64,000 bases of DNA, from the NCBI RefSeq assembly GCF_000315625.1, contig NW_005434615.1, positions 130,852-194,851 of the forward strand, given 5' to 3'. The notes under the pieces are model-generated. The model worked only from the letters and a program-made list of their open reading frames with translations, was not told the origin of the DNA and made no database searches. Position numbers and translations under genes: made by a program. This document shows, one piece after another, positions 39,976-60,493 of this stretch (position 1 is its first letter; each line of letters opens with the position of its first letter). The stretch is from Guillardia theta CCMP2712 (lineage: Eukaryota; Protista; Cryptophyta).

Positions 39976-40193
<218 letters not shown>

Positions 40194-45635: not shown

Positions 45636-51969
<6,334 letters not shown>

Positions 51970-55827: not shown

Positions 55828-56445
55828 NNNNNNNNNNNNNNNNNNNNNNNNNNNNNNNNNNNNNNNNNNNNNNNNNNNNNNNNNNNNNNNNNNNNNNNNN
55901 NNNNNNNNNNNNNNNNNNNNNNNNNNNNNNNNNNNNNNNNNNNNNNNNNNNNNNNNNNNNNNNNNNNNNNNNNNNNNNNNNNNNNNNNNNNNNNNNNNNN
56001 NNNNNNNNNNNNNNNNNNNNNNNNNNNNNNNNNNNNNNNNNNNNNNNNNNNNNNNNNNNNNNNNNNNNNNNNNNNNNNNNNNNNNNNNNNNNNNNNNNNN
56101 NNNNNNNNNNNNNNNNNNNNNNNNNNNNNNNNNNNNNNNNNNNNNNNNNNNNNNNNNNNNNNNNNNNNNNNNNNNNNNNNNNNNNNNNNNNNNNNNNNNN
56201 NNNNNNNNNNNNNNNNNNNNNNNNNNNNNNNNNNNNNNNNNNNNNNNNNNNNNNNNNNNNNNNNNNNNNNNNNNNNNNNNNNNNNNNNNNNNNNNNNNNN
56301 NNNNNNNNNNNNNNNNNNNNNNNNNNNNNNNNNNNNNNNNNNNNNNNNNNNNNNNNNNNNNNNNNNNNNNNNNNNNNNNNNNNNNNNNNNNNNNNNNNNN
56401 NNNNNNNNNNNNNNNNNNNNNNNNNNNNNNNNNNNNNNNNNNNNN
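55828..56445. other. Assembly gap (618 N), preceded by (GAG)n(GAT)n tracts
   Basis: Run of N. Confidence 1.
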
Positions 56446-57133: not shown

Positions 57134-60100
57134 ATGAGGCACCATCGCTTCGAAGAGTCGGACAAACCTGCCCAGATGCAATACTCCAGAATCATCCATA
57201 AAGTCCTTCCTTTCCTATGGCCTGAGAATCTTCAACTGCGTTTCCGCGTCGTCATCTGTGTTCTCCTCATCATCTCCGCGCGTGTAGCGAACGTGATGGT
57301 ACCTCAGCTCTACAAGGGAATCATCGACTCGCTGACCGGCAGCAAGACAGCCGATCCTTTGTTTCCTCTTGGATACATCATCATCTACACCGGCCTGAAG
57401 CTCTTCCAGACATTGCAAAGGGATGCCAGAGGGTTCGTGTGGTTGGACGTGGAGCAAGACACAAACAAAAGGATCAAGTTGGCGATCTTCTCGCACCTCC
57501 ACTCGCTCTCACACTCCTACCATATCAGTAGAAAGACAGGAGAGGTCCTCAAGGTCACTGAAAGAGGAGCCAGCAGCCTTCAGTCGCTGCTCAACATGGC
57601 CTTGTTCACCATCGGGCCGACGATCTTCGATCTTATCCTCATCTGCACAGTGCTGATGATCGACACGGACGTTGCATGCTCGCTCGTGATCCTCGTGTCT
57701 ATGGTGGTGTACTTCTACATAACTATCTACATGAACGACTGGAGGAAGCAGTTCCGCCGCGCCATGATCGATGCGGACAATCAGTGCAGCGATCGAGCTG
57801 TGAACTCGCTCATGAACTTTGAGACGGTGAAGTTCTTCGGGATGGAGAGGAAGGAGTGCGAGTACTTCGAGGAGAACCTCGTCGACTACAACCGAGCGGC
57901 TTGGAAGAACGAGGCCTCTCTTTATGCACTCAATGCTGCACAGCAGACTACCCTAGCAGCCGGAGCGTTTCTGTGCATGTACATCTCAGGTATAGTGTGT
58001 ATGAGCTGCTGCTCTCGTCTCTGAGGTCGAGGCAGGAAAGAAGGTGGTGGATGGAAGCTTGACTGTGGGAGATTTCGTGATGATCCAGACCTACATCGTG
58101 CAACTTTCTCAGCCCCTTGCGGTTCGCACTTGTCGGGTTGTTGTCTTTCTTCTGACTGCGATTCCTCAGTGGTTGGGAACAGCCTGGAGGGTTTTACAGC
58201 AGGCCTTCATTGACATGGAGAAGATGTTTGAGTTGCTGGATGTCAAGGCAAGAGACGTTTCAAGGGCCTGACTTGCTCTTGACGTCTTTCTATCAGCCGG
58301 ACATTGTCGACGCTCCTGACGCCGTGGCGCTAGAGGTAACTGGACTTGCTGAGACGAGTCGCGGCCGGATCTCATTCTGACCAAAGGTGACCAAGGGAGA
58401 AATCTCCTTCAGAAACGTCACTTTCAAGTACGACTACGGCAAATCCGAAGTGCTCCCTTCCTTGCTCCCTTCCCTTCCCCTCCCTCACCTCCCTCAGGTA
58501 CTCTCAGACCTCTCCTTTGAAATTCCTGCCGGACACACCGCGGCGTTCGTTGGGAAGACAGGAGCAGGTCGGAGCAAGAGGAGGGGAGCAGGAGGAGGCA
58601 GAAGGGGGAAATGGAGGAAAAGAGGACAACAAGGAGAGGTCAACGCATGGAATGACGGGAAGTGCAGGCAAGAGCACCATCGCGCGTCTGCTCATGCGCT
58701 TCTACGAGCTGGACACGAAGGAACAAGGAGCCGTGTGCGTTGATGGCATGGTCAGCGAGTTCTGTTCCCTCCTCTAGCGTGACGCTACCTCCATAGGATA
58801 TCCGCAAGGTCAAACAGCAGTCGCTGCGAGAGGCCATCGGCATCGTGCCGCAGGTTCCTGAACCCTCTGTACTCCCCTGTTGTCCTCCCTCCCCTTCCTC
58901 CCTCCCAGTCTCCCGCCCCCCCCCCCCCCATGCTTCCTCCGTCCTCCCTCCTCTCACGTTCCTCCAGGACGCTGTGCTGTTCAACGACACAATCAGGTAC
59001 AACTTGGCCTACGGCAGGTGAATGGCTGAACCCTCGCCACCTTGTCCTACCTGACTACCCCTCGTCTCGTCTCGTCTCGTCTCGTCTCGTCTCGTCTCGT
59101 CTCGTCTCGTCTCGTCTCGTCTCGTCTCGTCTCGTCTCGTCTCGTCTCGTCTCCTCTCCTCTCCTCGTCTCCTCTCCTCTCCTCGTCTCCTCTTCTCGTC
59201 TCCTCTCCCCTCCGTTCCTCACCCTCCTGCTCTCTTTTTGAGAGCTCTTGCAGGCAAGATGCAACTCTGGAGGAGATAATGGAAGCCGCTAGGATTGCTG
59301 CTGTGGTTTGTTGCCTCCCTCCTCTCTCAATTCGCTCCCTTCCGCACCTCCCTCTCTCTCTCCCTCTCCCTCTCCTTGTCCTTGTCCTCCTTCGCCCTCT
59401 GCTCCTTCTCTTTTTCCCTCTCCTCCTCCTTCTCCTCCTCTCTCCTCCCCCTCCTCCTTCTATCTCTCCTCCTTCTCCTTCTCCTTCTCCTTCTCCTTGT
59501 CCCTCTTCTCCTTCTCCTTCTCCTTCTCCTCTGCTCTCCTTTCTTATCCTTTGCCAGCATGACACGATCATGAACTTCCCCGACAAGTACGAGACGAGGG
59601 TGAGGAGGAGCAGTGAAGGGGCAAGACTGAAAGCAGCAACAGGTAGGGGAGAGGGGCTTGAAGCTGTCCGGGGGAGAGAAGCAGGTACCATTCTACCAAT
59701 CATCCCTCTTCCCTCCTCCCCTTCTCTGTCTCCACTCTTCTTCCTCCTCCTCCCCGCCTTTTTTCGGTTTTTCTTCCTTTGTTTGTATGAGCAAGGAGCA
59801 TGACTTGTGATCTCAGAGGGTAATGTGATCTCTTCGCGAAGAGAGACAAGCTTCATCAACACAAGATAAAGAAATGAGTCAGGTGGCTATCGCCAGGACC
59901 ATCCTGAAGAATCCGAAGATCGTTCTCCTCGACGAGGTTTTGCTTCCTTCTCGCCCTCGTCATCATCCTCGTTCTCACTTCTCCTCCTCCTCCTTTGTCC
60001 CTCCTCCTCCTCCTTCTCTCCTCGTCTGCTTACACGCTACCAAGGCCACCAGCGCGCTGGACTCGCACACGGAGTATGAGATCCAGGGAGCGCTGGAGGA

Positions 60101-60493
60101 GATGTGCAAGGGAAGGACGACGCTCATTATCGCCCATCGGCTCTCGACCGTTACACATGCTCACGTCATCTTTGTGCTCGAGGGAGGGGCCATCATCGAG
60201 AAGGGGGCGCATTCCGAGCTCCTCCTCAAGGTCACTCCCCACTGCTTCCTCTCCGTTCCTCTCCTCTCCTGAGACTCCCCTTCCCCCCCCCTCCTCTACA
60301 TCCTGCTCCTCCTCTCCTCGTCATCATCGTTGTCAGTGCTACATCCACCTGTTCATCGTCCCTCCTCCATGGCTTCTCTTCAACGTGATTCTTTGTACAG
60401 GACGGCGTCTATGCCTCCATGTGGAAACGGCAGCTAGAGAAACGAGAGATCACTGTGGTTGGCAAGGAAGAGGAGGAGGGCGCGGCCGACTGA
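57134..60493 (+). CDS. ABCB6: ABCB half-transporter of the ABCB6/HMT1/ATM1 (heavy-metal/Fe-S) subfamily, multi-exon
   Basis: LPFLWP; [23 protein letters not shown]; [11 protein letters not shown]; [11 protein letters not shown]; Walker A VGKTGA|GKST; IGIVPQ|[12 protein letters not shown]; [14 protein letters not shown]|R|[18 protein letters not shown]|ATSALD; [11 protein letters not shown]. Stop TGA at 60491-60493. The start is uncertain and the ortholog label is tentative. Confidence 0.92.
59060..59210. repeat. (CTCGT)n intronic microsatellite degenerating into (CTCCT)n
   Basis: Directly visible inside an ABC-gene intron. Confidence 0.95.

What the first reader, a model, noticed from the sequence alone, without database searches (positions are those of the whole stretch)
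59817..59819. Apparent 3-nt micro-exon encoding the conserved Arg of the ABC signature (LSGGEKQ-R-VAIAR)
Seen: the exon ends ...GAG AAG CAG|GTACCA (intron starts 59685) and the next large exon starts GTG GCT ATC GCC AGG at 59883, so the Arg is missing. Inside the intervening sequence is CATGAC...TCTCAG|AGG|GTAATG: a branch-like motif, an acceptor, one Arg codon and a strong donor, leaving a normal 63-nt second intron (59820..59882). Established: EKQRVAIAR is highly conserved in this subfamily. Inference: a one-codon exon that predictors and aligners would miss. Its skipping would be in frame and could switch the ATPase off.
Basis: partly seen in the sequence, partly recalled or inferred. Interest (0 to 1): 0.75.

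Follow-up and report, generated by a model that had tools for sequence, protein, structure and literature searches.

The report
One-codon exon in ABC transporter gene
In the alga Guillardia theta, a conserved arginine next to the ATP-site signature of a single-copy ABCB6/Atm1-type transporter is almost certainly encoded by a 3-base exon of its own; the public gene model skips it and so predicts a protein one residue short.

Summary
One exon ends ...GAGAAGCAG at 59684. AGG sits at 59817-59819 between tctcag and gtaatg. The next exon starts at 59883.

The window is Guillardia theta CCMP2712, and the gene is a single-copy ABCB6/Atm1-type half transporter. Its public model (GUITHDRAFT_74667) reads [12 protein letters not shown]. 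It is the only one of 217 fetched homologues with the motif that lacks this Arg.

The mRNA-derived ORF of the sister alga Hanusia phi (about 93% identical) reads LSGGEKQRVAIAR. An exhaustive listing of canonical splice combinations gives only one route to that sequence: the 3-nt exon.

The acceptor before AGG has the same layout as the 13 other introns of this gene, with a branch-like TGAC 13 nt upstream and a CAG. A usable AG-Arg-GT arises in 3.3% of shuffles, and in 0.4% with those extra features.

I found no G. theta RNA for this gene, so inclusion is inferred (about 0.85) and not shown. Regulated skipping as an off-switch is untested.

Earlier notes of this scan report many RNA-supported 3-nt exon arrays elsewhere in this genome. 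I did not test them. This exon is solitary and is not part of such an array.

Verdict: new member of a known kind, a mis-annotated micro-exon.

The parts
57134..57989 (+). Exon 1: start codon and whole transmembrane domain (ABC_membrane)
   Evidence: tblastn of Hanusia ORF P0028, 93% identity; Pfam PF00664 E 1.5e-33; junction located
58036..59599 (+). Exons 2-11 of the nucleotide-binding domain: 58036-58121, 58170-58247, 58297-58335, 58387-58449, 58498-58567, 58668-58750, 58797-58853, 58968-59017, 59254-59305, 59558-59599. Their introns are 43-252 nt. One is GC-AG (58248-58296).
   Evidence: Each junction was fixed by matching the Hanusia mRNA ORF
59643..59684 (+). Exon 12: [14 protein letters not shown] (ABC signature); ends in phase 0 before GTACCA
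59685..59816 (+). Intron A, 132 nt, GT...CAG. CT-rich like the other long introns of the gene. No AG lies between the branch-like motif and the acceptor.
59799..59804 (+). Branch-like motif CATGAC; its A (59803) is 13 nt from the intron's 3' end
   Evidence: all 13 reference introns have an nTnAn motif with the A 10-14 nt from the 3' end. Intron 6 has the same ATGAC at 12.
59817..59819 (+). Proposed 3-nt exon AGG = Arg of LSGGEKQ-R-VAIAR
   Evidence: It is the only in-frame canonical solution that restores the conserved sequence. The Arg is present in 216 of 217 homologues and in the Hanusia mRNA ORF. Chance 0.4-3.3%.
59820..59882 (+). Intron B, 63 nt, GTAATG...TCAG. Purine-rich like the gene's other short introns. 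Contains a 16-nt perfect palindrome at 59829-59844.
59883..59936 (+). Exon 14: [18 protein letters not shown] (Walker B)
60045..60230 (+). Exon 15: ATSALD...IAHRLST...LLLK (D-loop, H-loop)
60401..60493 (+). Exon 16: [14 protein letters not shown]... and the stop codon

Best explanation
The gene at 57134-60493 (+) is the single-copy ABCB6/Atm1-type ABC half transporter of Guillardia theta. Its nucleotide-binding domain is cut into 15 small exons. The Arg that follows LSGGEKQ is encoded by an exon of 3 nt (AGG, 59817-59819) flanked by a 132-nt and a 63-nt intron. Both introns are ordinary GT-AG introns. The upstream one ends with the gene's usual layout: a CT-rich tract, TGAC 13 nt before the end, then CAG.

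Inferred mechanism: the branch site of intron A and the donor of intron B are only 17 nt apart, so the two introns are probably removed one after the other by intron definition. Whichever goes first fuses AGG to a normal-sized neighbouring exon. No special machinery is then needed.

The mature protein reads LSGGEKQRVAIAR like all its relatives. The public model, which joins 59684 directly to 59883, is an annotation error. It is one of at least three in that model.

Shown: the anatomy, the uniqueness of the splice solution, the conservation of the Arg, and the error in the public model. Inferred: inclusion in G. theta mRNA, and the order of splicing.
For: - Coordinates and signals are read directly.
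- G000 is 87.1 Mb in 669 contigs. The annotated protein of this locus is GUITHDRAFT_74667 of G. theta CCMP2712 and reads GGEKQVAIAR.
- The Hanusia phi MMETSP transcript ORF P0028 ('type:complete', 93% identical over exon 1) reads GGEKQRVAIAR.
- All other orthologues fetched have the Arg. 216 of 217 homologues with the motif carry it. The only one short is the G. theta model.
- A listing of all GT/GC-AG and AT-AC single-intron solutions, and of all internal exons of 3-30 nt, gives one route to EKQRVAIAR: the 3-nt exon.
- Chance is 3.3%, 1.4% or 0.4%, depending on how many features are required.
- The acceptor context matches the 13 reference introns, with the branch-like A at 10-14 nt. Intron sizes of 132 and 63 nt lie within the gene's range of 43-252 nt.
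- The gene is single copy; the next best paralogue is 37-43% identical. It is otherwise intact.
- The public model is not transcript-based. It also misses a GC-AG intron, drops an exon and retains an intron.
Against: No RNA of G. theta covering this junction could be found:
- three word searches of the protein collection;
- two scans of metagenome contigs with the junction and with exon 14;
- exact look-ups of P0028 and P0029.

No Hanusia genomic DNA is available. The Arg in the Hanusia mRNA could therefore come from a gene without these introns.

The branch site of intron A and the donor of intron B are 17 nt apart, which should hinder simultaneous spliceosome assembly. Intron B has only a weak branch-like motif at the usual distance (ATAAA at 13; TTCAT at 27). 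The first base of the exon is A, whereas 10 of the 13 reference introns are followed by G.
Confidence: 0.85

Rival explanations
1. The public model is right. A single 198-nt intron (59685-59882) is removed, and the G. theta protein really lacks the Arg ([12 protein letters not shown]). The AG-AGG-GT inside the intron is a coincidence.
For: 59685 and 59882 are canonical GT and AG, and the product is in frame. It is the annotated model. No RNA contradicts it.
Against: It would be the only one of 217 homologues one residue short, in the helix directly after the signature motif. The sister alga's mRNA has the Arg. The gene is single copy and otherwise conserved. The coincidence has a probability of 0.4-3.3%. 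Splicing would have to ignore a CT-tract, TGAC, CAG acceptor with the gene's normal layout. The same public model is wrong at three other places.
Confidence: 0.07
2. The 3-nt exon is a regulated cassette. Both the +Arg and the delta-Arg mRNAs are made in meaningful amounts, and the delta-Arg form is an inactive or dominant-negative subunit of the homodimer. It is a sub-case of the best explanation, so its confidence is not additive with it.
For: Skipping is in frame and uses canonical sites. The close spacing of the branch site and the next donor could make inclusion inefficient.
Against: Nothing observed speaks for regulation. There is no special RNA fold (z = 0.36), no repeated or conserved intronic element, and no isoform data. 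Micro-exons in coding regions of plants are mostly included (PMC8831610).
Confidence: 0.1
3. An alternative acceptor at 59843 is used with the donor at 59685. This gives a 13-residue insertion that happens to begin with Arg ([21 protein letters not shown]).
For: It is canonical GT-AG, in frame and free of stops.
Against: No homologue has an insertion there. The Hanusia mRNA ORF has exactly one residue at that place. The acceptor lies in a purine-rich stretch.
Confidence: 0.03
4. The locus is a decaying pseudogene, so the missing codon needs no explanation.
For: The gene has unusually many introns, filled with microsatellites.
Against: All 16 exons are open and 77-100% identical to the Hanusia ORF. 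All catalytic motifs are intact. There is no other copy in the genome.
Confidence: 0.03

Closest known systems
Small micro-exons (1-15 nt) of plants that genome annotations miss (Nat Commun 2022, PMC8831610)
   Same: Tiny coding exons with ordinary GT-AG introns, inside conserved protein domains, mostly included in the mRNA. They are absent from reference annotations and are recoverable by comparison with conserved protein sequence.
   Different: This case is in a cryptophyte alga, not a plant. Here the exon is exactly one codon and encodes a residue next to the ABC signature. There is no RNA proof yet for this case.
Single-nucleotide and other extreme micro-exons (Arabidopsis APC11 and VPS55, 1 nt; Fusarium CYP621A, 1 nt, PMC12940212)
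   Same: They show that exons far below the size of a spliceosome footprint are spliced, and that they are found because a conserved protein cannot otherwise be assembled.
   Different: Those exons shift the frame if skipped. This one is frame-neutral, so a predictor pays no penalty for skipping it.
Animal neuronal micro-exons (3-27 nt; e.g. Genome Res 2015, PMC4317164)
   Same: They are often multiples of 3 nt and in frame, and they alter protein surfaces (abstract).
   Different: Those are regulated cassettes that depend on dedicated splicing factors. Nothing here indicates regulation.
Arrays of one-codon exons in Guillardia theta receptor-like genes
   Same: Same genome and same exon size. 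They would show that this alga's spliceosome handles 3-nt exons.
   Different: Those are tandem arrays with near-identical ~105-nt introns and branch signals about 58 nt from the acceptor, in fast-evolving N-termini. This exon is solitary. Its two introns are unlike each other and unique in the genome. The branch-like motif is at the normal 13 nt. The exon encodes an invariant residue of a housekeeping enzyme.
ABCB6 / HMT1 / Atm1-type ABC half transporters (human ABCB6 8yr3/7d7n, Novosphingobium Atm1 4mrn, Arabidopsis ATM3 7n58)
   Same: Same architecture, TMD then NBD. The best solved relatives score E 6e-158 to 1e-143 against the Hanusia orthologue over its whole length.
   Different: It lacks the extra N-terminal domain of animal ABCB6. 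No targeting sequence was analysed, and the substrate is unknown.

Membership tests
Coding micro-exon (internal exon of 30 nt or less, here 3 nt) | Canonical acceptor (AG) directly upstream and donor (GT) directly downstream | tested here: met
   tctcAG|AGG|GTaatg at 59810-59825
Coding micro-exon (internal exon of 30 nt or less, here 3 nt) | Both flanking introns are of workable size and carry the organism's usual signals | tested here: met
   132 and 63 nt against 43-252 nt for the 13 reference introns. ATGAC lies 13 nt before the acceptor of intron A, as in the others. Intron B has only a weak motif.
Coding micro-exon (internal exon of 30 nt or less, here 3 nt) | Inclusion keeps the frame and restores a conserved protein sequence that the flanking exons lack | tested here: met
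   It is the only solution giving EKQRVAIAR. The Arg is present in 216 of 217 homologues.
Coding micro-exon (internal exon of 30 nt or less, here 3 nt) | Seen in transcripts of the same organism | not testable with these tools
   No G. theta RNA for this gene in any collection reached. Only the sister species' mRNA ORF has the Arg.
Guillardia theta one-codon-exon arrays (earlier notes of this scan) | Tandem repetition of a 'codon plus ~105-nt near-identical intron' unit | tested here: not met
   There is no tandem repeat at the site, and the only repeats nearby are CT microsatellites. The interval is unique in the genome. The two introns differ in length and composition (CT fraction 0.76 against 0.38).
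Guillardia theta one-codon-exon arrays (earlier notes of this scan) | Branch signal displaced to about 58 nt from the acceptor | tested here: not met
   The branch-like ATGAC is at 13 nt
ABCB half transporter of the ABCB6/HMT1/Atm1 type | ABC_membrane domain followed by an ABC ATPase domain in one polypeptide | tested here: met
   PF00664 on exon 1. PF00005 and PF00664 are precomputed for P0028 and P0029.
ABCB half transporter of the ABCB6/HMT1/Atm1 type | Walker A, Q-loop, signature, Walker B, D-loop and H-loop all present | tested here: met
   GKTGAGKST, VPQD, LSGGEKQ, IVLLDE, ATSALD and IAHRLST are read on the exons
ABCB half transporter of the ABCB6/HMT1/Atm1 type | Closest solved relatives are ABCB6/Atm1 rather than other ABCB subfamilies | tested here: met
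   ABCB6 E 5.8e-158, NaAtm1 3.7e-144, ATM3 1.5e-143, ABCB7 1.5e-134, tested with the Hanusia orthologue. No NCBIfam equivalog reaches its cut-off.
ABCB half transporter of the ABCB6/HMT1/Atm1 type | Substrate and location (mitochondrion or vacuole; Fe-S, glutathione or metal conjugates) | not tested
   No experiment or targeting analysis was done here

The most novel reading that the evidence does not exclude
This solitary one-codon exon would be an alternative cassette. Its in-frame skipping would produce a delta-Arg subunit that poisons the homodimeric transporter, giving the alga a post-transcriptional on/off control of an Atm1/ABCB6-type exporter. It would also show that one-codon exons in this genome arise by ordinary intron gain at two adjacent proto-splice sites, and not only by tandem duplication.
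Probability: 0.1. Interest if true: 0.7.

Novelty: new member of a known kind. Interest (0 to 1): 0.45.

Why it matters
It corrects a reference protein. GUITHDRAFT_74667 lacks an invariant Arg beside the ABC signature and is also mis-modelled at three other splice sites.

It is a clean example of how a frame-neutral one-codon exon escapes gene predictors. In an intron-rich alga, a single-residue 'deletion' in a conserved motif should be read first as a missed micro-exon.

If RNA confirms it, it also shows a 3-nt exon with the branch site at the ordinary distance. That differs from the displaced-branch design noted for this genome's micro-exon arrays, and it bears on how small an exon intron-defined splicing can handle.

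Tried and rejected
- Looked for G. theta transcripts or transcript-derived proteins. Word searches with the 335-aa exon-1 frame, with the orthologue P0005 (NBD region) and with the 62-aa exon 15 inside a 147-aa open frame found the public model, the Hanusia ORFs and more distant orthologues, but no G. theta RNA product.
- Two scans of the metagenome contigs gave nothing: one with the junction pattern allowing 0-3 bases between the exons, one with exon 14 alone.
- Exact look-ups of P0028 and P0029 gave nothing.
- Looked for the same intron pair in relatives. The paralogues in G000 (L001, L002, L004), the Tara Oceans orthologue (L005) and a Logan contig (L008) encode EKQRVAIAR without interruption. 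L005 has an intron after VAIAR instead. They confirm the Arg but say nothing on the micro-exon.
- Tested whether the introns belong to a repeated intron family or an array. They do not.
- Tested for an unusual RNA fold across exon 12 to exon 14. There is none (z = 0.36).
- Literature: no paper in the held library links Guillardia or cryptophytes with micro-exons.
- The large representative search and structure prediction were not used. The family was already clear, and neither could show splicing.
- No full joined (spliced) model was built, saved or searched. Exons were searched by reference. Only short joins across single junctions were made inside scripts to place splice sites.

Full report
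**The observation**

- The exon encoding [14 protein letters not shown] is 59643-59684 and is followed by GTACCA.
- At 59810-59825 the sequence is atctcag|AGG|gtaatg, so AGG is 59817-59819. CATGAC lies at 59799-59804.
- The exon encoding [18 protein letters not shown] begins at 59883.
- The interval therefore splits into a 132-nt and a 63-nt GT-AG intron around one Arg codon.

**What the locus is**

The window is contig 59 (130852-194851) of an 87.1-Mb, 669-contig eukaryotic assembly. The annotated protein of this locus, returned by the protein search, is GUITHDRAFT_74667 of Guillardia theta CCMP2712 (P0029).

The gene has one large exon carrying the whole ABC_membrane domain (PF00664, E 1.5e-33). 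Fifteen small exons follow and carry the ATPase domain.

Against solved structures, the orthologue from the sister alga matches best human ABCB6 (E 5.8e-158), then Novosphingobium Atm1, Arabidopsis ATM3 and ABCB7. It is an ABCB6/HMT1/Atm1-type half transporter.

It is single copy. The next best match in the genome is 37-43% identical.

**The gene model**

I used the MMETSP transcript ORF P0028 as a guide. It is 615 aa, marked 'type:complete', and its N-terminus is identical to the EukProt Hanusia phi entry P0001. It is 93% identical to exon 1 here.

With it I placed every junction:
- Exons: 57134-57989, 58036-58121, 58170-58247, 58297-58335, 58387-58449, 58498-58567, 58668-58750, 58797-58853, 58968-59017, 59254-59305, 59558-59599, 59643-59684, then the gap in question, then 59883-59936, 60045-60230 and 60401-60493.
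- The 13 reference introns are 43-252 nt. Twelve are GT-AG and one is GC-AG (58248-58296).
- The short introns are of mixed or purine-rich composition. The long ones are filled with CT microsatellites.
- The donors share little beyond GT. The acceptors are mostly CAG.

All 13 reference introns have an nTnAn motif, mostly yTGAy, whose A lies 10-14 nt from the intron's 3' end.

**The missing Arg**

The public G. theta model reads [12 protein letters not shown]. The Hanusia mRNA ORF reads LSGGEKQRVAIAR. So do all other orthologues (P0024, P0005, P0026, P0027).

That is 214 by the strict pattern and two with small variants. The G. theta model is the only one a residue short.

The paralogues in the same genome encode the stretch without interruption. 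So do the orthologues on a Tara Oceans genomic contig and on a Logan contig.

From my own knowledge, not tested here: this Arg corresponds to CFTR R555, in the helix that follows the signature at the ATP-bound dimer interface. Deleting one residue would also shift the register of the helix leading into Walker B.

**Is the 3-nt exon the only way to get the Arg?**

I listed all single-intron solutions (GT-AG, GC-AG, AT-AC) around the two exons. I also listed all internal exons of 3-30 nt with AG before and GT or GC after.
- Only AGG at 59817-59819 gives EKQRVAIAR.
- The other in-frame options are the annotated one-residue deletion, a 13-residue insertion through an acceptor at 59843, two- or six-residue oddities, and products that lose part of the signature.
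- The overlapping second AG (59817-59818) would leave a 1-nt exon and break the frame. The first AG after the branch-like motif is 59815-59816.

**Chance**

AG-(Arg codon)-GT, with both resulting introns at least 40 nt, occurs in 3.3% of 20,000 dinucleotide-preserving shuffles of the 198-nt interval. It occurs in 1.4% if YAG is required, and in 0.4% if a branch-like motif is also required.

The empirical rate in the window predicts 0.02-0.04 per interval. The other 1311 nt of introns in the gene hold one such heptamer, 3 nt from an intron start and so unusable.

The candidate acceptor has the gene's standard layout: a CT-rich tract, ATGAC with its A 13 nt from the end, and CAG. Intron 6 has ATGAC at 12. 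A spliceosome removing a single 198-nt intron would have to ignore this site.

**The public model is not evidence for skipping**

Compared with the Hanusia ORF, the public model has three further errors:
- It misses the GC-AG intron.
- It drops exon 58297-58335 and part of the next exon.
- It retains the 48-nt intron 58450-58497.

It is therefore an ab initio product, and skipping a frame-neutral 3-nt exon costs a predictor nothing.

**Mechanism (inferred)**

The branch-like A of intron A (59803) and the donor of intron B (59820) are 17 nt apart. Both spliceosomes can hardly sit there at once.

With short introns and intron definition, the two introns can be removed in either order. Each first step fuses AGG to a normal-sized exon, of 45 or 57 nt, and leaves the other site intact.

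I found no unusual RNA fold (z = 0.36). The interval is unique in the genome.

Both intron positions lie at AG|R-type sites, like most introns of this gene. That fits two independent intron gains one codon apart.

**What is missing**

I found no G. theta RNA for this gene:
- three searches of the protein collection;
- two scans of metagenome contigs;
- two exact look-ups.

The EukProt Hanusia entry P0001 is an intron-retaining form. It shows that Hanusia shares at least the first five or six intron positions, but it stops before the signature. Whether Hanusia has the same micro-exon is therefore unknown. Inclusion in G. theta is inferred, at about 0.85. Regulated skipping is pure conjecture, at about 0.1.

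**Relation to what is known**

Micro-exons down to 1 nt are documented and are routinely mis-annotated (PMC8831610, read; PMC12940212 and PMC4317164, abstracts). No paper in the held library links cryptophytes with micro-exons.

Earlier notes of this scan report arrays of one-codon exons in receptor-like genes at many other places in this same genome, with RNA support. They describe repeated ~105-nt introns and displaced branch points. I could not test those notes, and they do not count as support.

This exon differs from them in four respects:
- it is solitary;
- its introns are unique and unlike each other;
- its branch-like motif is at the ordinary distance;
- it encodes an invariant residue of a housekeeping enzyme.

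The joined model was not assembled, saved or searched. Only short joins across single junctions were made inside scripts to place splice sites.

**Verdict**

This is a new member of a known kind, a mis-annotated micro-exon. Interest is moderate.

Noticed in passing
window 58248-58296: A GC-AG intron (aag|GCAAGA...tatcag, 49 nt) in the same gene. The public model P0029 misses it, skips exon 58297-58335 and part of 58387-58449, and retains intron 58450-58497. It loses about 27 real residues and adds about 19 spurious ones.
   Followed up: partly
window 59829-59844: A 16-nt perfect palindrome (TCTCTTCGCGAAGAGA) lies 9 nt downstream of the donor of the 63-nt intron. Its function is unknown. The region as a whole does not fold better than shuffles.
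   Followed up: partly
window 59018-59557 and 59937-60400: The long introns of the gene are filled with CT-rich microsatellites, e.g. (CTCGT)n at 59061-59207 and (CTCCTT)n at 59348-59541. The short introns (43-51 nt) have none. Intron length variation here looks driven by microsatellite expansion.
   Followed up: no
window 58568-60044: Introns of the ATPase domain fall at or next to each catalytic motif: Walker A (GAG|KST), Q-loop (VPQ|D), signature (EKQ|R|V) and Walker B (LLDE|ATSALD). The orthologue on Tara contig L005 has far fewer introns, and these lie at other positions, e.g. after VAIAR.
   Followed up: partly
window about 55830-56440: An assembly gap (run of N) lies about 700 nt upstream of the start codon of the gene, flanked by GGA/GAG repeats.
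   Followed up: no
window 50554-50900 and 39977-40193: Very long pure microsatellites: (CTG)x115 and (AGGC)x54.
   Followed up: no
L005/L006/L007 (Tara Oceans and other marine metagenome contigs, about 10-11.6 kb): Genomic contigs of an uncultured marine alga carry the orthologous transporter, about 60% identical in the TMD, with three introns. Neighbouring genes include HhH-GPD, Nop10p and an epimerase. They could be useful as an outgroup for intron gain in this gene.
   Followed up: partly
P0001 (EukProt Hanusia phi): This database protein is the translation of an intron-retaining transcript. In-frame intron translations appear after ISG, QPLA and DVK. It is not a real isoform, but it shows that Hanusia shares these intron positions with G. 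theta.
   Followed up: partly
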